Assembly (NCBI GenBank): GCA_044892525.1
Contig: CM097887.1
Coordinates: 105,812,397-105,876,396, forward strand
Length of the DNA stretch: 64,000 bases
Source: Schmidtea polychroa
Lineage: Eukaryota
Reading direction: 5' to 3'
Of the stretch, positions 15,945 through 50,300 are shown piece by piece; position 1 is the first letter of the stretch; each line of letters starts with the position of its first letter. The position numbers and the translations under genes were made by a program. The notes beneath the pieces are model-generated. The model was given only the letters and a program-made list of their open reading frames with translations. It made no database searches and was not told the DNA's origin.

Positions 15945-16121
15945 NNNNNNNNNNNNNNNNNNNNNNNNNNNNNNNNNNNNNNNNNNNNNNNNNNNNNNNN
16001 NNNNNNNNNNNNNNNNNNNNNNNNNNNNNNNNNNNNNNNNNNNNNNNNNNNNNNNNNNNNNNNNNNNNNNNNNNNNNNNNNNNNNNNNNNNNNNNNNNNN
16101 NNNNNNNNNNNNNNNNNNNNN
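15945..16121. other. Assembly gap (N run)
   Basis: Direct read. Confidence 1.
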
Positions 16122-20666: not shown

Positions 20667-20848
20667 NNNNNNNNNNNNNNNNNNNNNNNNNNNNNNNNNN
20701 NNNNNNNNNNNNNNNNNNNNNNNNNNNNNNNNNNNNNNNNNNNNNNNNNNNNNNNNNNNNNNNNNNNNNNNNNNNNNNNNNNNNNNNNNNNNNNNNNNNN
20801 NNNNNNNNNNNNNNNNNNNNNNNNNNNNNNNNNNNNNNNNNNNNNNNN
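20667..20848. other. Assembly gap (N run)
   Basis: Direct read. Confidence 1.
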
Positions 20849-29024: not shown

Positions 29025-29169
29025 NNNNNNNNNNNNNNNNNNNNNNNNNNNNNNNNNNNNNNNNNNNNNNNNNNNNNNNNNNNNNNNNNNNNNNNNNNNN
29101 NNNNNNNNNNNNNNNNNNNNNNNNNNNNNNNNNNNNNNNNNNNNNNNNNNNNNNNNNNNNNNNNNNNNN
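29025..29169. other. Assembly gap (N run)
   Basis: Direct read. Confidence 1.
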
Positions 29170-30652
29170 CTGATTTTCACTTTGAACTTAAGACTAATAG
29201 TAATGTTGAAAAGGAAATTCGAAATATTTTTTCTTTATTAACTTGTTTACCTGTTTTTATTAATAATTTTTATTTTCAATGATTATCATAACCCCTCGAT
29301 ACAGCATTTTATAGTAAATTTATATTAAATAAATAAGATTAAATTCTAATGTTGGAAATCTTAATTAATTTTGTACATAAAAATTAACTAAAAATAGATA
29401 TTAGTTGTGATGGTTAGGTGAGGCGAAATACCAAAGACACGAAATACTAAAATATCATTTTTCCAGATGGTGCTCATACAAAAATGTAGTGAATAGTAAT
29501 GGCAAAGATCTCAATTCACGATAGAAAGAACCCACGTAAGATTATTATTTTCCATACAATTTGTATAGATTTTGGTATGAATTTCATCGGAAGAGGTATA
29601 CTGTGTTGCTGCCTCTCTGATAATGAAGCAGTTGAACAAATATAAAAGTCATTGTCAATATGTAATCTATTTTTAACATTTTTTACATAATTGCATTTAA
29701 TAATTTTATTCCCTAACTGCATTCTATACCAATGGAAAATCATGAATACCTTATTAAGCATTCAATAAAAAAAGTGTTGTATAACGAGGTTTTGAATAAA
29801 AAGGAACCGATTCACCTTGTTATTCGAGGCTTTCTTGGACTAAGCAATAACTTATTGTAATTGAGATTACAAGTTGTAATTAAAATTAATATTTTTTGAT
29901 TCGATTTGAAATATTCATTAAAACAATAAAAACATGAATATTTTCTTTTGATGGAAATTTCGGAGGCAAATATTTCCTGACATGTATAATACATGCATAA
30001 TGCTACTTCCTAAATGGATATCAATTAATTTTCTGATTTACTACTCCTCATAATTTTCTTATTCGAAATAAACGAGAATTTTCTGAAATGAAATGATATT
30101 TCTAATCAAAAATCTGAAAATTGTTTTAGTTAACACAAATTTTCTTATTAACTGATTTCTTCATTGCTCGGGTCCACAATTGGCTCGGGCTTCCCATTAG
30201 CTCGTGTTTCCCATTAGCCAATTAATTAATTAATTAATATTTTGTGTTTTTTCATATTAGCCTGTTTTACGACCCTTTCTAAACATTTTCTAACAATTTC
30301 TTGCTCACTGTCTTCTTTACCATGACCTAATATACCCCTCTCCCGTTTTCCAGCTTCAATTTCGATAACATTTCACTTTATTCCAATTCCTCAAGTTTGC
30401 GCATTTTCCCATTTCATGTCTGATTGTATCATTTTATAGATCTGTTTTTATCATATCTTTCATTGCCATTGATTAATTTTCCATTAACTAACAATAAATA
30501 ATTATTGAAAAACTTATTAAAAACCATTTAAACCAATGAATAAAAGCATTTTTTAAATTGTTATTTTCACATAATTAATTGAAATTCTTATTTTGAAAAT
30601 TTCCGAGCGAGGCAACAATGCCATAGTATGAAACAATTGAATGAAAAATTTA

Positions 30653-31621
30653 CTAAAAAACAATGGATATGTTTTCGAATAATATACAAATATTATTGAC
30701 ATTTTTTATTAAAAATCTTTCTGCTTTATATCCCAGGTGCAGAAATAAATGCACAACAACTGCTTCTTCAATTTTATATTTCTGTTGTAGCCGATGATGA
30801 TGTAGCGTTTTGCAACCGTTGAACATCCAAAATCCCCTGGGTTTTTCACAACGTTTTTCAAGGTATTTTTTTGTAAGTGGTGAATAAATGTACGGATCTG
30901 CTAACGTTACTGGTTGTAAAGCGTACGTTTTAGTTAGCCTTTCTTTAGTATAAGAGTCGAAAGATTGAGTCAGCATAATCGGACCAGATTGATGTAATGC
31001 AGGAAAATGATTAGCTATTGTCAATTTTGAAATGAGATATTTGAAGAAATCATGATCTGGTATCGTTGCCATAAAACTATTCATGGCTACGTATGGTAAA
31101 TTATGTAGAATCCTCGACTGTTCATGAACTTCTTGACTAAGTATACAGCTATCATTCAACATTGCTCCATGAAATGGTTTCTGACATCGGGTATCGAAGT
31201 CCATATAAATGCCACCGAATTTATATAAAATAAAATATCTAATCACGTCTGATATTTTCAAAGGATCTGTAAATTTAGAGAAATAAGAACTGTACAATTC
31301 GACATGGTGCTGAAAGTTGTTGATAATAAAGCGATATGCAGTAAAATCCGCCCAGAAAACAAACTTTGAATCCTTATTAATGGTCATGCAGTTCTTGACA
31401 TGCGGAGAATATTGCGTAGGGATATATGCTGTTTTGTACACATAATGGATTATTTTCGGTATTCCGTTTGTGTATCGATTCTTTTTGCCGTATTCTATAA
31501 GATAATTAACGGAAACAAGTTTACAATGACCTGACGTAACATTGAAATCTTGTTTAATATTTGTTTCCGCTTTGAATTTCTCCATCAAACATAATGAAGC
31601 TATTAAAATCATGAAAATCAT
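30653..31621 (-). CDS. GT32-family (Gly_transf_sug/OCH1-SUR1-like) DXD glycosyltransferase, 322 aa, intronless, copy 1
   Basis: IPKIIHYVYKT, SDVIRYFILYKFGGIYMDFD (DXD), NSFMATIPDHDFF and SGPIMLT motifs; hydrophobic N-terminal signal/anchor. Confidence 0.88.
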   Translation of the reverse strand: MIFMILIASLCLMEKFKAETNIKQDFNVTSGHCKLVSVNYLIEYGKKNRYTNGIPKIIHYVYKTAYIPTQYSPHVKNCMTINKDSKFVFWADFTAYRFIINNFQHHVELYSSYFSKFTDPLKISDVIRYFILYKFGGIYMDFDTRCQKPFHGAMLNDSCILSQEVHEQSRILHNLPYVAMNSFMATIPDHDFFKYLISKLTIANHFPALHQSGPIMLTQSFDSYTKERLTKTYALQPVTLADPYIYSPLTKKYLEKRCEKPRGFWMFNGCKTLHHHRLQQKYKIEEAVVVHLFLHLGYKAERFLIKNVNNICILFENISIVF

Positions 31622-32566
31622 TTTGATTTTTATGCGGAATTTTTAAAATAATAGTTAAATTCTATTATAAATAAATGTAATCAATACCTTCTAAAATGTC
31701 TGCGATTTATGAGTTTTCCTTTAATATTATTTCCGCAACTTAAATGCCCGTGTAATATATGATTCGCCCTTTCAATAATTATTTGCGGCTTTCATAATTT
31801 ATTGGTCCCATACTTAATGGACAATTAATGTGGTGGACAATGACGCGTATAGCCGTCATGACGTCTATTCTGGGAACAGCAACTAAAAAAGTGCGTCCGC
31901 GAAAGGGTTAATTATCAAGAGCGTGTAAATAGAATTCTTAGTTTAACAGCATAAACAGTTTAAATAATTACGTTTCATGGTGATCAATGGTAATCGAGAA
32001 TGAAAAGGCTAACTAAATCAACAAAAAATTGTCGAAGTTGGTTGAAGAAATTTAGGTGTACTTCGTTCCGTTATCAATAAGAAAACTAAAACTTCTAAAA
32101 CTTATTCATTTACTAAACAATTTCAGAAAAAGAATAGCGAGTGTGCTTATTGTGAAATTGTGTATTGTCAAAGTGAAAAATAGCGATATTGCGAAAAAGT
32201 GACAATTCTAACGTTGTTGTAATATTGTACTATATTCAATAAAGTTTCAAAATTGCTGGGTGTTGTTTGTTTATTTAATTGAAAACATAATGAGCTAGGT
32301 TCAATCTTAAAGATGATAGTCGAATTACAGAAAACACTGTAAAGCCCTTTAATTTCTGATCTCAGTCGGATTAAGTATGGGACCAATAAATTATGAAAGC
32401 CGCAAATAATTATTGAAAGGGCGAATCATATATTACACGGGCATTTAAGTTGCGGAAATAATATTAAAGGAAAACTCATAAATCGCAGACATTTTAGAAG
32501 GTATTGATTACATTTATTTATAATAGAATTGAACTATTATTTTAAAAATTCCGCATAAAAATCAAA

Positions 32567-33535
32567 ATGATTTTCATGATTTTAATAGCTTCATTATGTT
32601 TGATGGAGAAATTCAAAGCGGAAACAAATATTAAACAAGATTTCAATGTTACGTCAGGTCATTGTAAACTTGTTTCCGTTAATTATCTTATAGAATACGG
32701 CAAAAAGAATCGATACACAAACGGAATACCGAAAATTATCCATTATGTGTACAAAACAGCATATATCCCTACGCAATATTCTCCGCATGTCAAGAACTGC
32801 ATGACCATTAATAAGGATTCAAAGTTTGTTTTCTGGGCGGATTTTACTGCATATCGCTTTATTATCAACAACTTTCAGCACCATGTCGAATTGTACAGTT
32901 CTTATTTCTCTAAATTTACAGATCCTTTGAAAATATCAGACGTGATTAGATATTTTATTTTATATAAATTCGGTGGCATTTATATGGACTTCGATACCCG
33001 ATGTCAGAAACCATTTCATGGAGCAATGTTGAATGATAGCTGTATACTTAGTCAAGAAGTTCATGAACAGTCGAGGATTCTACATAATTTACCATACGTA
33101 GCCATGAATAGTTTTATGGCAACGATACCAGATCATGATTTCTTCAAATATCTCATTTCAAAATTGACAATAGCTAATCATTTTCCTGCATTACATCAAT
33201 CTGGTCCGATTATGCTGACTCAATCTTTCGACTCTTATACTAAAGAAAGGCTAACTAAAACGTACGCTTTACAACCAGTAACGTTAGCAGATCCGTACAT
33301 TTATTCACCACTTACAAAAAAATACCTTGAAAAACGTTGTGAAAAACCCAGGGGATTTTGGATGTTCAACGGTTGCAAAACGCTACATCATCATCGGCTA
33401 CAACAGAAATATAAAATTGAAGAAGCAGTTGTTGTGCATTTATTTCTGCACCTGGGATATAAAGCAGAAAGATTTTTAATAAAAAATGTCAATAATATTT
33501 GTATATTATTCGAAAACATATCCATTGTTTTTTAG
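32567..33535 (+). CDS. GT32-family DXD glycosyltransferase, 322 aa, intronless, copy 2 (identical protein to copy 1)
   Basis: The ORF track gives identical translations; mirror coordinates sum to 64188. Confidence 0.88.
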   Translation: MIFMILIASLCLMEKFKAETNIKQDFNVTSGHCKLVSVNYLIEYGKKNRYTNGIPKIIHYVYKTAYIPTQYSPHVKNCMTINKDSKFVFWADFTAYRFIINNFQHHVELYSSYFSKFTDPLKISDVIRYFILYKFGGIYMDFDTRCQKPFHGAMLNDSCILSQEVHEQSRILHNLPYVAMNSFMATIPDHDFFKYLISKLTIANHFPALHQSGPIMLTQSFDSYTKERLTKTYALQPVTLADPYIYSPLTKKYLEKRCEKPRGFWMFNGCKTLHHHRLQQKYKIEEAVVVHLFLHLGYKAERFLIKNVNNICILFENISIVF

Positions 33536-34914
33536 TAAATTTTTCATTCAATTGTTTCATACTATGGCATTGTTGCCTCGCTCGGAAATTTTCAAAATAA
33601 GAATTTCAATTAATTATGTGAAAATAACAATTTAAAAAATGTTTTTATTCATTGGTTTAAATGGTTTTTAATAAGTTTTTCAATAATTATTTATTGTTAA
33701 TTAAACTAATATAATTTTATTCAGAAAAATTTGCACTTTTATAATCGTTCGAGTGGTGCATTACTTTGATTTTTGATGCAGCACATCACGAGTTTCCTGA
33801 GTCGCAGATGAATCGCTTGAAATTCATTGATTCGAATGACACACATTGATTATATCTGTAACTATTTCTGACTTCATTTACATTCCCACATAACCAGCTC
33901 TCGATCCAATGATATTTAACAGTAGATTTACGGACTGAGCCAATTTGACTCATTTAAAATTCTATTTTTTCATATATATAATACTGATTTATTATTTTTT
34001 TAATACATATGTTGGTTTATAGATACGTCATGAAATATAGGTAAATATTAATTACTCTTATCTACCGAATCCCTCATTTCGCATAGCTAATTAGGTATAC
34101 CTATTTTTATGGTTATTTTTACCCGTAAATCTAGTGCTAAACAATTTTAGAACTATATTCCTATTGTTACCATCTCCGGGTACATAGTTACATCTAAAGG
34201 TGACATCCCGACGGACTGTGTGGTTTTTGGGAGTGTTACACCTACGCAACAGAAATCTTTAACTAGATCAATACTCTTTTAGAAGGCATATCTGTCAATC
34301 TGGCTTCTCTATAGGTACGTCAATTAGGGTAGCCTTATTTATCGGTTGTGTGCAACTTAACAAAAGCTATATGATATGAATCACAAATCCAATTTTATCT
34401 GTGATATTAATACTTTTAACTCATAACAAATCGCATTTTTCGAACATACCTAACGAAATTGCACGGTAGAAAGAAGCCTAATAATTCCATTATAAAATAA
34501 ATTACAGTTAAAAAGTTTAGTCTTTCTATAGTTATTTATACTGAATATTTGTAATATTCATTCCACGGGATGACATGTTTTCTCAACCAGCACAAACCCA
34601 TACACGTATCCTTATGGTACCAATAGACACACGAAGTCACTATCATCATTACTGTAAGAGTTTGTCGTAGAGTCAGACACTTAATTACTTACGACCGAAT
34701 GTTGAAATAATCAAACTATGAATAAATAATTTGTGATAACTTGTTTTTTCCCACTTTTTCTTTTTCGCACACAGCAGTGGAGAGTGAAAATAATATATAG
34801 GAAGAACCCAATTCTGAAAGAATTGGAAAAGTAAAACCAATTATTGAAGAATTTAAAGACAAAGAGATATATTTTGACAAAAAATCATCTTAAAATAGAT
34901 AAATAAAAACAATT

Positions 34915-37900
34915 TCAATAATATGCTGCTTCAGAATCTTTCAAAAATTCCAAGCGATTCCTAAGGATCATGTATTGATCCAAATCCACAGGTTCCAAAA
35001 GCAGATCATCGTCAGCTTCTAAATCCACTGGTTCTTCGACCAGCAACTGCTTCCACCAGGGTTGTTTGATCGTATTGATTTTCTGTTGGTGCAATTGTGC
35101 AGCTCTATTAGCAATCGGGCGGATTTTGCAATGGAAATTGTCGATTTTGAATTTTATATCAGACTGATTTTTGAAACCATCAACAGCTTCATTGAGATCG
35201 GGTGCTGAGATCAATAATTTCGAATCTGTTTCCAACCTTGCCAGAGTCAGTTCTCGATCAATGTCCTGAAAATTATTTTAATAAATGTACACCTCATTTG
35301 TTTCAACTGATTTCAATAATGGTCAAACAGTAAATAAATCTACAAAAATAATTCGTTTTTGTTTTCACCTTTGATCTGTTTTCATTTACATTTTCAATGT
35401 CCTATATTTAACACAAATTTTTAGCACTGCTTTTTTCAAATGTTTAACTTGATAAATGAAGATAAATAAGAAAAAGATATAAAACTATTTTTCTTTCGAA
35501 TTCAATAAGAAAAAAGATCAAAAATTAATTTTCTATCCTTTTTTAAAATTTTTTTATGAAAATAAATTAAATATCAAAATAAAAGAAAACTAATCAAAGG
35601 TAACAAAGAAAATAAAAAAGATAGAAGACTATGAATCAGTAAATATATTAATGTTTTTGATATTTACGGATTTTGGCACAGCCTTTTCAAGTGAATTTCA
35701 TCAAATTCACTTGGGAAAAAGGCAGTGACGAAAATTCATGAATATCAAAAACATCTAGCTTTTTAGTAAATACAATGGAAATGAAATCAGCGGTAAAATT
35801 GGGAAAAAAGTTCTTATAATAACAAAGAAAAGATTTTACTGATGCAACTATTTTTTAACTTACTTTTTTCTTTGTTAAATATTGCAGTTAGATGTATCAT
35901 GGAATTTCATAAGTAATAAATACGATAACTAAAACAAATGTTTTTTTTTAAAATATATCAGTTTGTAATTGCAAAGAGAGCCCGCATTGATGAATTGCAT
36001 TGGGGACCCGGCCTGGCTCTCGACGGCCCTGGTTAGAACGCGGTTTTATAAAACATTCTAAATTTTATTATATAAATATTGAAGAAATACCAATCAAAAA
36101 TGTTAATCTCAATTTTCAAAAAAAATCGATCATTTAAAAAATCCACTCTTAAATATTTGAATGTTTGCAGTATGTTGAAATTGAGTGACAATATTGCTCA
36201 AGATATCATATCGAATATTACTAAGAACTCTATCTGTTATTATCTGATAATATTAAATCATGCATTTTCTTATTAAAATTCAAAAGAATTTATTTTCTTA
36301 GATAAATAAAATTTGTTTCAGATTATATATTATTTCCAAGGTTCAATTATTTCTGCAACCCGTAAAATAATACAAGTACGAGAAAACAAGTTTAAAAATG
36401 TCAAAACTTGAAATCAAGCAAAAAAAGCATGTAAAGAAAAAGTGAAAATATTTCGAATTGAAACATCTACAGCTATATTAGATTATCCGAACTCTGAATT
36501 AATCAAACGACTTGCAGCCTATACGAATATATTTGAAAAAAATAAAGCTTTTATACGATTGCTGATGTTTCAGATATTTCCAATATTATTCAAAAACATG
36601 TACCGCTGATCAACTGAAACACAAAACTGCGCTTAAGCTTTGTAAATTGCTGCGAAAAACAATTTACATAATTAATTAATTAATTAAATAAAAATAGCAA
36701 TTCTTTAATTGTAAGAAATCAGCACTTAACCCTTTCATTCGGGAATTAATTCTGTGGGTAAATTAATTATCTAGACCATCAAACCTAGTAAGGGGACTCA
36801 AATTATGCAAAATAATAAAAAAATAATTTAATTATTTAAAATGTACTAGAACAAATTTCAATTTTCTTAAAAAGTACTTCTCACATTATATTTTCGAAAA
36901 GGTACAACAGATATTCAGCACATAAAAATGTGTACAATATATTGTACACTCCGTATAAAAGGATTAAAAATAAGTTTTACAAAATATTTCCACAGTTTCC
37001 TTGTTATCACCAAACAGGATAGAAAAAACTATTGATATATTTAATAAACAAATTTTATTAATTTAAAAAAATATTAATCAATTATTTTTCAATTTAGATC
37101 AGTGTTGTCCAAACTGTGTGCCGTGGAATATTTTTAAAAAAAGTCAAAAAACCCTGTTTTTCCAAACAACTTAATAAAAGGCAATTTGATTGTGGATATT
37201 TTAACAGTTATTTCAAATTTAAATGTTAATCAGTCAATTAAGTGCGAAATTTATTTGTTTAACTATGTTCTATGAATTGTTCATTCACTAATTTTTCTAA
37301 ATTTAAAATTTTTTACATTAAATTTATTTCAAGTAAATAAGTTTTTCATTTCTTATTAAAAGATTAGTAAAAGTGCAATAAAAAATTGCAAATAAAGCAA
37401 AAAAGAATTTAGGTGTACCGCGAAAATTTTTAAATCAGCCAAGTGTGCCGTGGCTCAAAAAAGTTTGGACAACACTGATTTAGATTATCTTCCATAAATA
37501 TATTGAAACATTTCTAAAATAATTTATTATAATTACAATTTTATAATTTGTTAAAATTATAAAAAAAACTTTTTTTCAAATTTCATCACTGATTTCTTTT
37601 CCATTATATTTATTAAAAATATAAATTTTATGTATGTTTCAAAAAATATAAGAAATATAGAATAGTAGAAATCAAACCTTTCGACGATTAGTTTTCAATT
37701 GATAAAGATGCCGGTGGTACAATTTTTGAGCTTTATGGTGAAGTTCCAGTTGAGTTTCTTCACTAATTCCTCTGAATTCATGCTTATGTGACGCCATCCA
37801 TTTATTGTGAACTTTATTCAATTCGGTCTTCCTTTCCATATTCAAGCCTGGAATATCCCAATATTTAAATTCTGACTGTTCATCACCCTCATGGTAGATT

Positions 37901-40900
37901 TGGATTAAATCTCTCTTTGACAACCAAGCTCGAACGCATCTCTGAATTCTAATAGCGGCTTTACTTTTTCGATATAACTGCTGTCTCGTAATTAGTTGAC
38001 GCCGTTCTCTATGACCCCTCCAAACAGACTGAATAGTAGTAGCTGCTTCTTGTTTCGTCTTTTCTAAATGTTTAAACACAATTGGTGCTGGTAGTGTTTC
38101 CATTAACAAAACTTCAGCTTCCAATTTACTACGAAATTTTCTTTGCCTTGTAATGGAAATTTGATGTTCTAATTCTTTACGAATTCTCAAAGTATTTTGT
38201 TCTTTGATTTCTCTTAGTTTTCTTGATCTATAATTTCTCTGTAAGAATTAAATTTGTTTACTATATTTGCTAATGATCCTAACTTGAAATTTTTCAAATG
38301 CTTTGTTAGTCTTAGCTAACTTTAATCGAACAGCGACACTTCTCCACCATGACTGGATTTTGATGATCGCCCATAAATTAGTTGACATTTCGGCTTGATA
38401 AATTAAATCTGAATCCAGCATTTTTAGCAAAAGCCGAAAGTTTTGAGAAAATAAACTCGAGAATCCAACTTTTAAAGTTGAATTTTGAGACATTGACCAT
38501 TTGAGAATAAGCAATTTCAACCCTTTGTAACGAAAGTGAATCATGGAGACAAGCGATTGATCTGCTTCAAACATCGTTAGAAGGCAACTAATTGATAATA
38601 ATTAAGGTATAGCGAAATTATCGAACTAAGTATAAGAACTTATTTATTAGAAATTAGAAAGTACGAAAACAAATAATAAATCACAAAAAATAAATCATAG
38701 TTCAGACTGACGTCCGCATTAAATACTTTTCAATGTTAAAGACATTTCTTGGCTTTGAGGTATACGCACTAAAATAGTTTTGCTATAATCTTTCGCAAAA
38801 CAAAATTAGACTTTCAATATTTGAACGATTAGATTAGAACGATTATATTCCATTTCCAAATTGAATCTCTTATATGCAGACAATTAGTACGATTCACTCA
38901 TGTGACATCTTTTGCAAGTGTAAAAAAAATGTACCCGCACACAATCAACTCAAAATAGTCTTTATTTCGCATCTTGATTTGTACGAATTAAACCGGATGT
39001 ATTTAGCATTTATTCTATGATCCTAACTACATGGCCTAATAAGTATGTATGCATGTATCGAGTAGTGTCTACAGTTGTCTGTTTATAGCATATTGAATTT
39101 GGAAATTATGTATTGTTAATAAGACACGTTCGTCATTTTAACCAAGTACTGTTAATATTTTAATAAGGTTGAGTAGTTGGTTATCCATTGACATTTGCAG
39201 TTTTAACTGAATTTTATATGAAATTTTTCAATACATGTAATTAAAGCGGTTTTCATAATTTAATCGACAAAAAACTATTATTCGTGAATTTTTCAAAAGT
39301 AAACCATTAAAATTAAAACAATCATTATCCTTAATAAATATATTGTATAGATCCCAGTAAAAATAAGGATAAAAATAAAAGTAGCGATTAAAAAATAGTA
39401 GAATTAAGATGAGTAGAGTAAAATAGTAACAATATCAAAATCGAAGGAAAATAGTACCTTATATATGAACAAAATTATTCCATAGATAAAATAATAGCAG
39501 TGCCGAAAAAATATAATTTTTTTATATAACTAAATAAACTGTAAATAAAAAATCCTGAATGGTTTGTAGCAGCATAAATAAAATGTTAAACAAGAAAATG
39601 ACAAAATTTGCCTTTGCTACAAAATATTTTCAATCGATTTTTTTATAATCGAAAATTTTCACACTCAATAAATATTTTGCAGCTTATGCTTATTTTATCA
39701 ATTACTTGTTTAACCCATTACCTCCCACTGTACTCACATGAGTACACTTGTTAAAGGCGTGATTTTATGTTTTTCTATAATGATTATCCTAGAAGTAGTG
39801 ACCCATTTCAACAATATATGGCACTAGTAATCTACGAAAAAATGCAATAAGGCGGCAACGCAATGATAACCGTTATTAATGTCAGTTGGTTTGTAAATAT
39901 TTCCTTTTTGGCGTTAATGGGTTAATAAATAAATTTTAATGTATAACTAAATTAAAATGAAAAATATGAGTTCATAAACATTTGTGGAACTTCTTCATCT
40001 TTGGAAGAGATATGTGAAGGAAAATGGCTTATATATATTAAGAAATGAGCTATTGTTGGAGTATGTAACTGTATTAAATGTAGCCAATGTTTTAGTAACT
40101 CAGAACTTCTTGATCCAATTATAATACCTTAATTAATACCTACAAGACATGAGAAGAGAACCAAAGAAGAGTTTCCGAAAGATGCTCAAAGATTCAATAT
40201 TTGATTCTATTTGAAAACAATAAAGAAATAAAGAAAAAAGTAGAAGAACTCGAAAAATTATAAGAAACTTTTCTAATTTTTTTTTATTATGAAATAATAA
40301 ATTTTCGTAAATTGATAATTAAAACAAAAACTTACTTAACATTTATTTCTATCAATTGCTTATTATCACTGCTAGCTAAATGGTATATGATTTCATCAAG
40401 AATTGTCGACACTACGTTGCCAATTCCTTTCACTGTTGACTTGGTGATCTTTTTGAGCCCGCTCGGATTGATCTTGATAAGTTTCATTAACCATTCAGTC
40501 ATTAGCATGGAAATTTTATCATTGTCAGTAATAAAAAGTTGAAGAAACCACGGAGACTCAATCATTGTTGATACATAATCAGAAAATCTAACAAGGAAAC
40601 TTTCCGACAATTCCAGCACCCCTTTCATTTCTTTCAATAATTCCACCGAATTCATTATTCCTCGATATTCTGGTACTAGAGATTCGTTAAAGTTTCCTTG
40701 CAATTGACGAAGAAAGCACATCACATTTTCAATAAATTCAGGAATGAATCTATTATGAATTTCGTTCTCCTCGGATCTATTTTGTGGGACAACTCGAGAT
40801 AAAATATCATAAATTGTATGAACTATGCAAAATCCATCTTTCCATGATTTCGGTTCAACATTTGTGTAATCTCTTTTGATCTCCAATAACATGATTGGCA

Positions 40901-47378: not shown

Positions 47379-50300
47379 GGTGGGTCGAATGTTAATAAAT
47401 TTTGAGTTCAAGAAAGGAAACATGGTTAAAAAGTTGTATTTTGGTATAGAAAAATCGAATCAAACCATTTTACTTAGATTTATGGACATTTACTGCTCCC
47501 AACTTTTCTCCGAAAATGCAGTTCAACATAAGTGTGAAAACAATGTAATTTGGCTAGTGTCGGAATGTGTTTTGCGCCTTTGTCCATATTTAGATGTAGC
47601 TTTCTTAAGAGCTTATAAGTATATTATTTACTCTTTTGGGCTGAGATAGTATATTCTGTGTCCTCATCCCGCATTGAAATATATCCTGACAACGTCAGTG
47701 ATTAGGAAGGGCCAAATTTGAATTATCCTTTTCAAAGACAAAAATCAACTTTCGAAATTATTTTTTATTAAAAACATCCAGCCAAAAGTTTAGAAATGTA
47801 TTAGCGAGGGCATAAAAAGAAGTCACATGAAATCAGCTTTGCTTTGCACCTTGGGCAATTCCTTCCTTGATTTTTTACACAGTAGTACCATACCATGTCT
47901 GGACTTGTGACCAAACACTTTGCAACTGGCAGAAGAAACATCTTTGATGGCTCTTTCAACGGCTTGAGAATGACAGGGAAATTGTTCTAATGTAATTTTC
48001 TTATTCATCTTCAATTCATGATCCAATATATGAGATAAAAGAGGGGGAGGCGTCAAATTACATTTTGTCCAGTCAATCATGTCAGCATATGATGTAGCAG
48101 ACGACTGAAGAAAGACAGTATTCTTGTCCATAGTGCGAATCACTTCGGAAGGGAGAAAATTTTGTCTTGCAGTTATGATTTTTTCTGTTGCAAACTTTCT
48201 GATTTCTTCATCATCATCACCAACAGCAGCTAGGAGTATATTTTCTGGATGTGAGAAGTAATTGTTGTTCTGAATGACAGGAAAGATGATTTCTTGGTCT
48301 GATGGATCCAAATCCTGCAGAAGTTGGAGCATATAAAAAATATTTCTTGCACCATCTTGGCATGACGAGTGAATCTTTATATAAAACCATGACGGTCCAT
48401 AGAAATTGACAATAAATTTCACTATTCGCATGAGAGGTTCAGATGGAGCAGTTTCGGACATATATAGTCGCAGAATTCTATTAGCTTTCGTTAGCCAGCG
48501 ACTGTGATTCAAATTTCCTGGTTGTGCCATTTGTAGAAAAGGGACATCCTTGTTGTTGTGGTACCCTTTCTGGACTGCCAAGCATACTCTGAGGAAATAC
48601 AATTGATCAGTGTTCAATTCTTTCTTGACATTTTCACTAATATCTACGACCTTTCCAGGAAGGGACATAAAGGCTACTACGGGCTTGTCTTTTGGATCAA
48701 AATCAAGAACGCTTCCTATTTCACCACATGACGTTTTTGGACCTTTTGTTTCTCCACCATCGACGACTGAAAAATACTTCCTGAATGGCAATTCATTTGC
48801 ATGCAACAAGCATATCAGCCATTGTAGAGGTCGCCCTAGGCTTTTTTCGAGTCTTCTGATTATTCCATTATTTTTTCCGGTGTTTGTATTGGTTCCATCG
48901 CACACAATTGCTTGAAGGGTCAGTGAGGACTGCGTGCTAACGATGATTGACATGATTTCTTTGCCAATATCCACAGCTTTACTACTTTGAGGTACAACAT
49001 GATCGATATATGTATCCCCTGGAAAGGCGACAATCACATAATGCTCCTCTTTTAGGATCCTTCTATGAAGTAAGGTGGAATCTTGTTTCCCGTCGAAACC
49101 GAGGCAAATCAAGTTTTTCGCTTCTGCTGAATGCTGTTCAATTTCTCTCTCCCTCCAGTACTTTCTCTGACGTCGTAATTTTGCGGGATCGATGATTGTT
49201 TGAGAGGATAACAGTTCCATATCTTTCAGAAAAGCGTTTACTAGCAAACACGTGTCTCTGTTGCTCACACCACATCTGTCAACAGCTTTACTTAATTCAG
49301 GATAATGTCTTCTATTTTGAAATTCATCACATTCTTCTACGCTTGACTCTGAGCTTTCTGTTGAATTGTCTAACTTATCTTTACTTTCATCACTAGCGGC
49401 TTCACTCTCCGTGTCACTTCTTGAGGTCGGATGTAGATCGTTAACTTCAGTGTCCATTATTTCATTTTTCATTTGTTTTCCTTTTCCTGTAGGGCTGCTT
49501 TTCGTTTGTTTTCTCTTCAATTTTGAGGTTTCCTGTCTGTCCGTATTTCCGATTTTCATGTTTCTGGTAGTTTGTTGGTCAATCCAGAACTCCCACTCTA
49601 AGGTAGGAATTTTCAAGGCCAATCGGCATGTACACTGACTTCTTCCACGAGCACCATCATTAAAACATTTGCAGCAACATATGTCAAACAATTTGGAAAA
49701 CGAGCTTAACTTATCTTGAAATTTGGCAGATGACCTCTTGCATACTGGATACTTCTCTAATTCACGCACTTTTGATATTAGTCGCTTGACACGAACCACA
49801 ATACTACTGAACTCAACAGTTGGGATACTTGCCTTCATATAAATTTCCTTCACCTTATTTGCGAGAAGAGTTGCTTGTTCGTTAAAGCCAATATGAAATT
49901 GCGTACATTTCTCATTGTAACAGTAATCACGAAACACATCCTCACAAGTAGGTAATTGGTTTCTGGGTAGTTCACAAGTTTGACCAAACAGACAATGAGG
50001 TGATTTACTTCTTGTTTTGCGAAATTGCTTATTTCTCTGTCCCTTCATAACTGCTCTTCTGTACTCAGCTCTGGCAAAATAAAAGTGAATCATCAAGTTA
50101 ACTTTTTTAATTAGGTCCAGCAAACACTTGACATCCAATCGAAACAAATTAAATTATCTGAGTTTAGACTGACTAGTAGTATCCATGTGGATTATGTGTT
50201 GACTGTAGTGTGTGTGTTAGTATTGTTCAGAAGAAATTGTCTTTGTGAGTGCTTGTGTGAAGGTGCTTCCGTGAATTAACCTCTCTATACATGCACGCGT

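What the first reader, a model, noticed from the sequence alone, without database searches (positions are those of the whole stretch)
30484..33704. Head-to-head palindrome carrying two protein-identical glycosyltransferase genes
Seen: 1335-bp inverted arms with no net indel, identical 322-aa translations, and at least three mismatches in non-coding flanks (e.g. GAATTG vs GAATTT near 32531; one near each outer end). Each copy keeps ~197 bp of duplicated 5' sequence around a unique 551-bp spacer. Inference: either a very recent fold-back duplication giving double dosage from a shared bidirectional promoter, or a palindrome homogenised by gene conversion (established for Y-chromosome palindromes). 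The flank mismatches argue against a trivial assembly mirror but do not exclude collapsed/false haplotype joining.
Basis: partly seen in the sequence, partly recalled or inferred. Interest (0 to 1): 0.7.

Follow-up and report, generated by a model that had tools for sequence, protein, structure and literature searches.

The report
Young mirror-image twin glycosyltransferase genes
Two back-to-front copies of one complete sugar-transferase gene sit 0.55 kb apart in an AT-rich animal genome; the duplication is real and recent and looks like an ordinary fold-back DNA-repair product, probably seeded at the broken end of a tiny transposon.

Summary
Arms 30484-31818 and 32370-33704 are 1335 nt each, with a 551-nt unique spacer, no indels and two identical 322-aa ORFs placed head to head. 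There are four mismatches, not three. One is a synonymous change inside the gene. The one at 32531 is not seen in two read sets.

It is not an assembly mirror. Short-read contigs from two studies bridge three of the four junctions, and both show two arm-type copies by depth.

The protein is a GT32 (Och1-like, DXD) glycosyltransferase. It belongs to an intronless family with more than 50 matches in this 781-Mb genome.

The left arm-spacer junction abuts a truncated 82-bp piggyBac-type MITE through a 5-nt microhomology, followed by a stutter of MITE-derived snippets. This fits snap-back repair synthesis, with the left arm as the new copy. That step is inferred.

Arm-to-arm gene conversion can be neither shown nor excluded. 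Conversion does act in this family: a paralogue 255 kb away shares a 440-bp tract with dS 0.06, against more than 1.4 outside the tract. Young pairs in the family are mostly inverted.

The scan has already noted other gene-bearing palindromes elsewhere in this genome. This is a new member of a known kind, of modest interest.

The parts
30156..30474 (.). 319-bp high-copy interspersed repeat that ends 9 nt before the left arm
   Evidence: over 2000 first-look candidates, copies about 92% identical, all matching query 257-575; word depth about 5000x the single-copy level.
30484..31818 (-). Left arm (gene orientation is the - strand); probably the derived copy
   Evidence: Contig 30409-30518 bridges its outer junction at single-copy depth, and the arm-only contig 30489-31060 has 1.85x flank depth.
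30653..31621 (-). GT32 glycosyltransferase gene, left copy, 322 aa, no intron
31814..31833 (+). Left inner junction. The arm's last 5 nt (TTAAT) equal MITE nt 5-9. They are followed by MITE nt 10-16, nt 6-10 and nt 9-11: a stutter of templated snippets.
   Evidence: Sequence read directly against the MITE consensus taken from five other copies.
31819..32369 (.). 551-nt single-copy spacer (loop)
   Evidence: unique apart from the MITE and one 150-nt 75% match. Contigs 31903-32736 (X1) and 31885-32747 (X5) bridge it to the right arm.
31834..31911 (+). piggyBac-type MITE body (consensus about 82 bp, ends CCCTTT...AAAGGG, TTAA target duplication). Its left terminal 8 nt and its left TTAA are missing here.
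32345..32353 (+). CCCTTTAAT, identical to MITE nt 1-9, lying 16 nt from the right arm; meaning unresolved
   Evidence: two matches in the window, 1.0 expected in 64 kb, so about 0.009 expected in the spacer.
32370..33704 (+). Right arm; probably the parental copy
   Evidence: Contigs 33670-33952 (X1) and 33159-33883 (X5) bridge its outer junction.
32567..33535 (+). GT32 glycosyltransferase gene, right copy, 322 aa, no intron
   Evidence: RNA-like contigs 33175-33398 (X8) and 33297-33478 (X9), each with one difference; they cannot be assigned to one arm.
32718..33157 (+). Tract, mirrored at 31031-31470, shared at 98.4% with the paralogue at C3:105588318-105589256: an ectopic gene-conversion tract
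33908..34149 (.). About 230-bp high-copy interspersed repeat, 200 nt beyond the right arm

Best explanation
This is a real, young inverted (fold-back) duplication of a 1335-bp DNA segment. The segment holds one complete intronless GT32 glycosyltransferase gene, with 197 nt upstream and 169 nt downstream. It lies in an AT-rich, roughly 0.78-Gb animal genome whose features suit a planarian, though that was not verified. Both copies are intact and encode the same protein. Two arm-type copies, the right outer junction and the spacer-right-arm junction are seen in both strains or individuals sampled. The left outer junction is seen only in X1, and the left inner junction in neither.

Most likely origin (inferred). 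A double-strand break at the left end of a small piggyBac-type MITE lay about 0.46 kb upstream of the original (right) gene. The resected 3' end, ending in ATTAA, snapped back onto its own strand at a complementary TTAAT just upstream of the gene. It copied 1.33 kb outward through the gene. The product was then joined to the other broken end at a TTAA. That left the MITE remnant plus upstream DNA as the 551-nt loop, and a stutter of MITE-templated snippets at the new junction.

Shown: the structure, the copy number, the gene family, the junction sequences, and gene conversion among paralogues. Inferred: which arm is new, the break at the MITE end, and snap-back synthesis.
For: - Structure.
- Independent reads, run X1: contigs bridge the left outer junction (30409-30518, depth 38), the right outer junction (33670-33952, depth 34.6) and the spacer-right-arm junction (31903-32736). 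The arm-only contig 30489-31060 has depth 66.8 against flanks of 35.5-36.2.
- Independent reads, run X5, a different study with about 1% SNPs: at 31157 the arm-type base has depth 106 and the paralogue-type base 56.7, against single-copy flanks of 48-55. That means two arm copies. One search confirms that the minority base is the paralogue's state.
- Contigs break exactly at arm differences 30488 and 32737 in X1, so both variants are in the reads.
- Gene identity: PF04488 at 55.5 bits against a cut-off of 23. D141 and D143 (the DXD motif) and 18 other columns are invariant across 19 relatives. The AlphaFold model (pLDDT 78.5) best matches the fungal GT32 enzyme Och1, 9n3s, E 2e-8.
- Junction: five other MITE copies read TTAA-CCCTTTAA-TGGACAATGACG.... 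In the window, the arm end plus the next 7 nt (31814-31825) match MITE nt 5-16 at 12 of 12 positions, followed by partial repeats of nt 6-10 and 9-11 before nt 9-82.
- Both ends of the duplicated unit carry TTAA.
- Not a retrocopy: no poly(A) tail and no target duplication.
Against: - The left arm-spacer junction itself was not seen in a listed read contig; it lies 15 nt from a high-copy MITE.
- Only contigs built from reads were available, not long reads, so no single molecule spans both arms.
- TTAA and TTAAT are common here (0.016 and 0.012 per base), so the microhomologies are weak evidence on their own.
- A second MITE-end 9-mer next to the right arm (32345-32353) is not explained by the simple model.
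- No empty-site allele or outgroup was available to polarise the event.
Confidence: 0.7

Rival explanations
1. An older palindrome whose arms are kept nearly identical by repeated arm-to-arm gene conversion, as in sex-chromosome palindromes. The near-identity would then reflect homogenisation, not youth.
For: - The duplication is present in two lineages whose unique flanks differ by about 1% (25 differences in about 2.5 kb), while the arms differ by only 0.22-0.30%.
- In X5, four sites (32665, 33464, 33465, 33664) differ from both reference arms with no reference-type contig seen, as expected if both X5 arms changed together.
- Arm difference 32737 breaks the contig in X1 but not in X5.
- Ectopic conversion is demonstrable in this family across 255 kb (dS 0.06 in the tract against 1.4-2.2 outside).
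Against: - The numbers are too small. If the duplication predates the strain split, at least about 5.9 neutral differences are expected and 3 are seen (Poisson P about 0.16, my calculation).
- Contigs can drop the second variant, so 'no reference-type contig' is not proof.
- Older inverted pairs of the same family have drifted to 98% identity with many indels and pseudogenes, so homogenisation is not general here.
Confidence: 0.3
2. An inverted duplication produced by a small inversion with staggered breaks. On this model the 551-nt spacer is an inverted segment and the arms are the filled-in staggered ends.
For: The layout (arm, short unique segment, inverted arm, with sharp ends) is what that model gives.
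Against: A stagger of 1.3 kb is very long. The left junction shows templated stutter at a transposon end, which the snap-back model explains directly. The right inner junction shows no templated snippet or microhomology, though a MITE-end 9-mer lies 16 nt away.
Confidence: 0.08
3. An assembly artefact: a mirror join, a chimeric fold-back read, or two haplotypes of a single-copy gene joined falsely.
For: Near-perfect palindromes are a known artefact of some long-read and amplification libraries. One of the four arm differences (32531) is not backed by reads. The left inner junction was not seen in a listed contig.
Against: Arm depth is about 2x the flanks in two separate studies. Three of the four junctions are bridged. 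Arm-specific variants are phased to different unique flanks at full single-copy depth. There is a unique 551-nt spacer.
Confidence: 0.04
4. A hairpin-RNA locus: read-through transcription across both arms gives a 1.3-kb double-stranded RNA that feeds small-RNA silencing of this gene family.
For: Any transcript crossing both arms would fold into a near-perfect hairpin. The tract shared at 98% with a paralogue would allow cross-targeting.
Against: The genes point outward, so their own transcription does not cross the spacer. The two RNA-like runs have no contig on the unique spacer. Both ORFs are intact and identical, and the family core is under purifying selection (dN/dS about 0.13).
Confidence: 0.04

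Closest known systems
Young inverted gene duplicates and fold-back (snap-back) inverted duplications made by microhomology-primed repair synthesis (polymerase-theta-type templated insertions; MMBIR/FoSTeS inverted duplications). This comparison rests on my own knowledge of the literature, not on a paper read here.
   Same: Two arms in inverted order with sharp ends, a short unique loop, a few nucleotides of microhomology at the priming site, and stuttered templated snippets at the new junction.
   Different: The break appears to lie at the tip of a piggyBac-type MITE. The copied tract is a whole functional gene with its flanks. No experimental or polymorphism proof of the pathway is available.
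Sex-chromosome palindromes with arm-to-arm gene conversion (primate Y; mouse X palindromes, bioRxiv 10.1101/800185, abstract seen)
   Same: Gene-bearing inverted arms over 99% identical around a unique spacer. Gene conversion is a credible homogeniser.
   Different: The arms are 1.3 kb, not 10 kb to megabases. The locus sits on a large chromosome of unknown sex linkage. It holds one gene, and concerted evolution is not demonstrated.
GT32 glycosyltransferases: fungal Och1 alpha-1,6-mannosyltransferase (PDB 9n3s) and IMT1/Sur1-type inositol-phosphoceramide mannosyltransferases
   Same: PF04488 domain with the DXD motif, GT-A fold with Och1 as best structural match, and an N-terminal hydrophobic segment as in secretory-pathway transferases.
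   Different: Only 13% identity to Och1, with TM 0.46. The donor and acceptor sugars are unknown. It belongs to a large, fast-diverging, intronless animal-lineage expansion.
Other palindromes noted by this scan in the same genome (s1-223937 DDX5 twins, s1-225475 U1 snRNA locus, s1-220244 transposon-seeded fold-back)
   Same: Near-perfect inverted duplications, some gene-bearing, some next to transposon ends.
   Different: They lie on other DNA and have other arm sizes. I did not test those notes.

Membership tests
Inverted segmental duplication (palindrome) | Two arms in inverted orientation with high identity and sharp ends around a unique spacer | tested here: met
   1335-nt arms, 99.7% identity, 551-nt spacer, no homology beyond the arms.
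Inverted segmental duplication (palindrome) | Both arms exist in the organism's DNA: double depth and distinct outer junctions in independent reads | tested here: met
   X1 arm contig depth 66.8 against flanks of about 36. In X5 the arm-type base has depth 106 against 56.7 for the paralogue-type base. Three of four junctions are bridged; the left inner junction is not listed.
Palindrome maintained by arm-to-arm gene conversion | Arm-to-arm divergence clearly below the divergence of the same arm between lineages that both carry the palindrome | tested here: inconclusive
   Arms differ by 0.22-0.30%, flanks between strains by about 1%. That is 3 differences observed against at least 5.9 expected, P about 0.16.
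Palindrome maintained by arm-to-arm gene conversion | Changes shared by both arms within one lineage (concerted changes) | tested here: inconclusive
   Four X5 sites show no reference-type contig, but contigs can drop variants and the arms are not phased.
Palindrome maintained by arm-to-arm gene conversion | The palindrome is present in sister species | not testable with these tools
   No relatives of this genome are in the collections.
GT32 glycosyltransferase (PF04488) | Pfam domain above the gathering score | tested here: met
   55.5 bits against a cut-off of 23, E 9.7e-15.
GT32 glycosyltransferase (PF04488) | DXD metal- and nucleotide-sugar-binding motif conserved | tested here: met
   D141 and D143 are invariant in 19 sequences, as are D92, D125, R128 and Y129.
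GT32 glycosyltransferase (PF04488) | GT-A fold like solved GT32 enzymes | tested here: met
   model pLDDT 78.5. The best PDB match is Och1 9n3s, E 2e-8, probability 1.00, TM 0.46.
GT32 glycosyltransferase (PF04488) | Transferase activity and its substrates | not testable with these tools
   Needs an enzyme assay.
Assembly mirror or false haplotype join | Single-copy depth over the arms and junctions absent from independent data | tested here: not met
   about 2x depth in two studies, with the outer junctions and one inner junction bridged.
Retrocopy | Poly(A) tail and target-site duplication at the copy's ends | tested here: not met
   no A-run at either arm's 3' end and no direct repeat flanking either arm. 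The whole family lacks introns, so lack of an intron says nothing here.
Gene carried inside a transposon (transduplication) | Terminal inverted repeats and further copies with the same ends | tested here: not met
   only the two arms share the non-coding parts. The only internal inverted match is a 15-nt AT-rich one, E 0.027.
Hairpin-RNA (endogenous siRNA) locus | A transcript crossing both arms, and small RNAs from both strands | tested here: inconclusive
   no contig on the unique spacer in the two RNA-like runs. Contigs cannot show absence, and no small-RNA data were available.

The most novel reading that the evidence does not exclude
In this genome, snap-back repair at transposon ends may be a main route by which new gene copies arise. 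That would explain why young duplicates of this GT32 family are mostly inverted pairs (six at 98-99.9% identity, plus an older one at 85%, against one direct pair and one tandem array seen), and why the scan keeps finding near-perfect gene-bearing palindromes. On this view the present locus is the freshest, smallest case, with its birth scar still readable. Close arms would then also be kept alike by gene conversion.
Probability: 0.2. Interest if true: 0.55.

Novelty: new member of a known kind. Interest (0 to 1): 0.33.

Why it matters
The locus is a clean, very young example of how a whole gene can be doubled in one repair event, and the junction still carries the marks of the process. It also shows that members of a large, fast-evolving glycosyltransferase family overwrite parts of one another, with the catalytic core homogenised and the N- and C-terminal parts divergent. 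That matters for anyone annotating or building trees of this family. It adds one more verified case to a genome that seems rich in small palindromes. It does not reveal a new kind of system.

Tried and rejected
- Weaker inverted homology beyond the arms, or across the MITE and repeat insertions: none found.
- Exact-protein look-up in public assemblies: not on record.
- Context of the relatives P0004 and P0002: only 1.2-1.6-kb contigs holding a single gene, so nothing on copy arrangement in other species.
- Rfam scan of the window: no family.
- Sequence search of solved structures: only E 0.05 to Och1; the fold search was needed.
- Literature search for palindromes in planarian genomes and for GT32 expansions: nothing specific. 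One planarian paper gives four chromosome pairs and about 774 Mb, which suits this genome but does not identify it.
- A 44-nt spacer-less joint suggested by one X9 contig (31664 joined to 32524): absent from the assembly even with 3 mismatches. Set aside as an unreliable 22-nt-side joint.
- The 16 nt between the 9-mer at 32345 and the right arm: no local template found.
- Retrocopy and transposon-cargo readings: rejected, see the membership tests.
- The bacterial promoter scanner was not used, because it does not apply to a eukaryote.
Full report
**1. Observation**

The window holds one large inverted repeat: arms 30484-31818 and 32370-33704, 1335 nt each, 551 nt apart. A base-by-base comparison finds four mismatches and no indel. 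These are, left/right, 30488/33700, 30546/33642, 31451/32737 and 31657/32531. Identity falls to background immediately outside both ends and inside the spacer.

Each arm holds an ATG-to-stop ORF of 322 codons, at 30653-31621 on the minus strand and 32567-33535 on the plus strand. The translations are identical, and the genes are arranged head to head. Each copy keeps 197 nt before its ATG and 169 nt after its stop.

One mismatch (31451/32737) is inside the gene, at a synonymous third codon position. The GAATTG/GAATTT difference at 32531 exists in the assembly, but both DNA read sets read the left-arm state there.

**2. Is it real DNA or an assembly product?**

The window is C3:105812397-105876396 of a 781-Mb assembly with 1012 contigs. 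It is about 27% G+C.

Only contigs built from public short-read runs could be laid, not raw or long reads.

Run X1 is letter-identical to the window except at 32531, so it is probably the assembly's own strain.
- A 110-nt contig (30409-30518) crosses the left outer junction at depth 38.
- A 283-nt contig (33670-33952) crosses the right outer junction at depth 34.6.
- An 834-nt contig (31903-32736) runs from the spacer into the right arm.
- The contig that lies only in an arm (30489-31060) has depth 66.8, against 35.5-36.2 for the unique flanks. That is 1.85-fold.
- Contigs stop exactly at arm differences 30488 and 32737, as expected if both variants are in the reads.
- The variant 5 nt inside each outer junction is carried on a contig that also holds that arm's own unique flank. 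It is therefore a true difference between two places, not between two alleles.

Run X5 comes from another study and differs from the window at about 1% of unique flank positions.
- Contigs cross the spacer-right-arm junction and the right outer junction.
- At 31157, the base typical of the arms has depth 106 and the base typical of the paralogue L011 has depth 56.7, while single-copy flanks have 48-55. One search confirms that the minority base is L011's state. So X5 also carries two arm-type copies.

The left arm-spacer junction was not among the listed contigs. It lies 15 nt from a high-copy element. I put an assembly artefact at about 4%.

**3. What the gene is**

- The protein matches PF04488, the DXD-containing sugar-binding region of GT32 glycosyltransferases, at 55.5 bits against a cut-off of 23.
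- The language-model atlas places it among GT32/IMT1-type clusters.
- In an alignment with nine paralogues and nine database relatives, D141 and D143 (the DXD motif), D92, D125, R128, Y129, N181, S182, G213, P214 and three cysteines are invariant.
- An AlphaFold model built on that alignment (mean pLDDT 78.5) best matches the fungal GT32 mannosyltransferase Och1, 9n3s, at E 2e-8. Other GT-A transferases follow.
- The N-terminus is a short hydrophobic helix, as in secretory-pathway transferases. This last point is an inference.

The genome holds at least 56 six-frame matches, most of them uninterrupted ORFs of 280-360 codons. The family is therefore large and intronless. The nearest paralogue is only 69% identical in protein. 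Database relatives at 43-64% identity come from unnamed metagenomic or transcriptomic sources. By their sequence ends they look like orthologues of other family members, not of this gene.

Contigs from two runs that look like RNA runs (the run type is the tool's guess) cover 33175-33398 and 33297-33478 with one difference each. That part is specific to this gene, so at least one copy seems to be transcribed at a low level. Which copy cannot be said.

**4. Surroundings and junction anatomy**

- A 319-bp repeat with thousands of copies lies at 30156-30474 and ends 9 nt before the left arm.
- A 230-bp repeat lies at 33908-34149.
- In the spacer, 31834-31911 is a copy of a short element. Five other copies read TTAA-CCCTTTAA-TGGACAATGACG...CGCGAAAGGG-TTAA. 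This is an 82-bp MITE with piggyBac-type ends and a TTAA target duplication.

The copy in the window lacks its left TTAA and its first 8 nt. Read against the consensus, the left junction runs as follows:
- the last five bases of the arm (TTAAT, 31814-31818) equal MITE nt 5-9;
- the next seven (31819-31825) equal nt 10-16;
- then come nt 6-10 (31826-31830) and nt 9-11 (31831-31833);
- then the element continues from nt 9 to its end.

Such a stutter of short pieces copied from the adjacent sequence is what microhomology-primed, repeatedly aborted repair synthesis leaves behind. That comparison rests on established knowledge of alternative end joining and is not tested here.

The right arm begins with ATTAA, the complement of that TTAAT. 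Both arms end outward in TTAA.

**5. Most likely mechanism (inferred)**

1. The original gene is the right copy. About 0.46 kb upstream of it sat an intact MITE.
2. A break occurred at the MITE's left tip, which is where a piggyBac-type transposase cuts.
3. After resection, the 3' end of the lower strand ended in ATTAA. It paired with TTAAT on the same strand at 32370-32374.
4. It was then extended rightward for 1.33 kb through the gene.
5. The new strand was joined to the other broken end at a TTAA, the sequence such breaks leave.

This gives exactly the present order: flank, inverted copy, stuttered junction, truncated MITE, upstream DNA, original gene.

Weak points:
- TTAA and TTAAT are frequent in this DNA (0.016 and 0.012 per base).
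- No empty allele or outgroup was available.
- A second copy of the MITE's first nine bases lies 16 nt from the right arm (32345-32353). About 0.009 such matches are expected in the spacer by chance, and the simple model does not explain it.
- A staggered-break micro-inversion would give the same gross layout.

**6. Youth or homogenisation?**

Gene conversion certainly acts in this family. The paralogue at C3:105588318-105589256, 255 kb away, is 98.4% identical to the arms over about 440 nt (right-arm positions 32718-33157). On both sides of that tract identity is about 50-65%. Synonymous divergence is 0.06 in the tract, against 1.4 in the C-terminal part and 2.2 in the N-terminal part. More distant paralogues are saturated in the same core, so nucleotide-level constraint does not explain the tract.

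At the one coding difference between the arms, the right arm shares its base with that paralogue and the left arm shares its base with two others.

For the arms themselves the evidence is thin. Both strains carry two copies, their flanks differ by about 1%, and the arms differ by 0.22-0.30%. Four X5 sites differ from both reference arms with no reference-type contig seen. This is the pattern conversion would give. Against that, only about 5.9 neutral differences would be expected without conversion and 3 are seen (P about 0.16, my calculation). Contigs can also hide the second variant.

Older inverted pairs of this family have drifted, which argues against general homogenisation:
- an 8.9-kb-arm palindrome at C3:120255165-120278713, at 98.2% identity with 45 gaps and stop codons in both gene copies;
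- pairs at 97.9%, 98% and 85%.

I therefore treat conversion between the arms as likely to occur, but not as needed to explain the identity.

**7. Context and novelty**

- Among the young pairs of this family that I compared, six are inverted at 97.9-99.9% identity, counting this one. They lie 0.5 to 56 kb apart. A seventh, at 85%, is older.
- One pair is direct (98.5%), and there is one tandem array on an unplaced contig.
- Earlier notes of this scan list many other palindromes in the same genome, some gene-bearing. I did not test those notes.

Inverted young duplicates, fold-back duplications and arm-to-arm conversion are all known phenomena. This locus is a new, tidy member of that kind. 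Its modest extra value lies in the readable junction and in the clear paralogue conversion tract.

**8. Limits**

- No long reads and no raw reads were available.
- The three N runs in the window (15945-16121, 20667-20848, 29025-29169) were left as they are, and the read stretch was chosen to start beyond the nearest one.

Noticed in passing
window 32718-33157 (mirror 31031-31470) and L011:1471-2445 (G000:C3:105588318-105589256): Mosaic paralogue. It is 98.4% identical to the arms over about 440 nt of the catalytic core (dS 0.06) but about 50-65% identical on both sides (dS 1.4-2.2). This is a clear ectopic gene-conversion tract across 255 kb. L012 shows an older, weaker version (core dS 0.34).
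   Followed up: yes
G000:C3:120255165-120264023 and 120269871-120278713 (loci L053-L056): A second, larger palindrome carrying the same gene family. Its arms are 8.9 kb at 98.2% identity with 45 gap openings, around a 5.85-kb spacer bordered by tandem repeats of about 58 bp. The GT32 copies point tail to tail and are broken by a TGA.
   Followed up: partly
L019/L020, L032/L036, L033/L037, L014/L023, L012/L013 (G000 C3, C2 and C70; places): Further inverted pairs of family members at 97.9%, 99.9%, 99.8%, 98% and 85% identity, 19-56 kb apart. By contrast there is one direct pair (L018/L021, 98.5%) and a 25.8-kb tandem array on C70. Inverted order dominates the young duplicates of this family.
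   Followed up: partly
window 31834-31911; L040-L044: An 82-bp MITE family with CCCTTT...AAAGGG ends and TTAA target duplications (piggyBac type). There are at least 40 scored copies at 85-97% identity.
   Followed up: partly
window 32531: The assembly reads G, but contigs from both DNA runs (X1 and X5) read T, which is the left-arm state. This may be a consensus error or a rare variant. An odd high-depth X9 contig seems to carry the G.
   Followed up: partly
window 31664 joined to 32524 (run X9): One short contig (depth 420, only 22 nt on a side) joins mirror-image positions of the two arms with no spacer. The joined 44-mer is absent from the assembly even with 3 mismatches. It may be a snap-back cDNA artefact or foreign AT-rich sequence. 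Unexplained.
   Followed up: partly
window 32404-32418 and 33678-33692 (mirrored at 31770-31784 and 30496-30510): A 15-nt AT-rich sequence, AAATAATTATTGAAA, lies near one end of the duplicated unit and its reverse complement lies near the other (E 0.027 in a small search). Probably chance.
   Followed up: no
window 34915-35235 (-): A 106-codon ORF covered by RNA-like contigs (X8 contig of 480 nt; X9 contig of 2556 nt at depth 44). It is probably an exon of a well-expressed neighbouring gene. It has no Pfam match.
   Followed up: no
window 47823-50147 (-): A 774-codon ORF in the stretch that another note calls a hAT-like transposon. It gave no Pfam family at E 0.001.
   Followed up: no
window 37672-38190 (-): A 172-codon ORF with an IQ calmodulin-binding motif (PF00612, E 1.6e-8). 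It may be an exon of a host gene.
   Followed up: no
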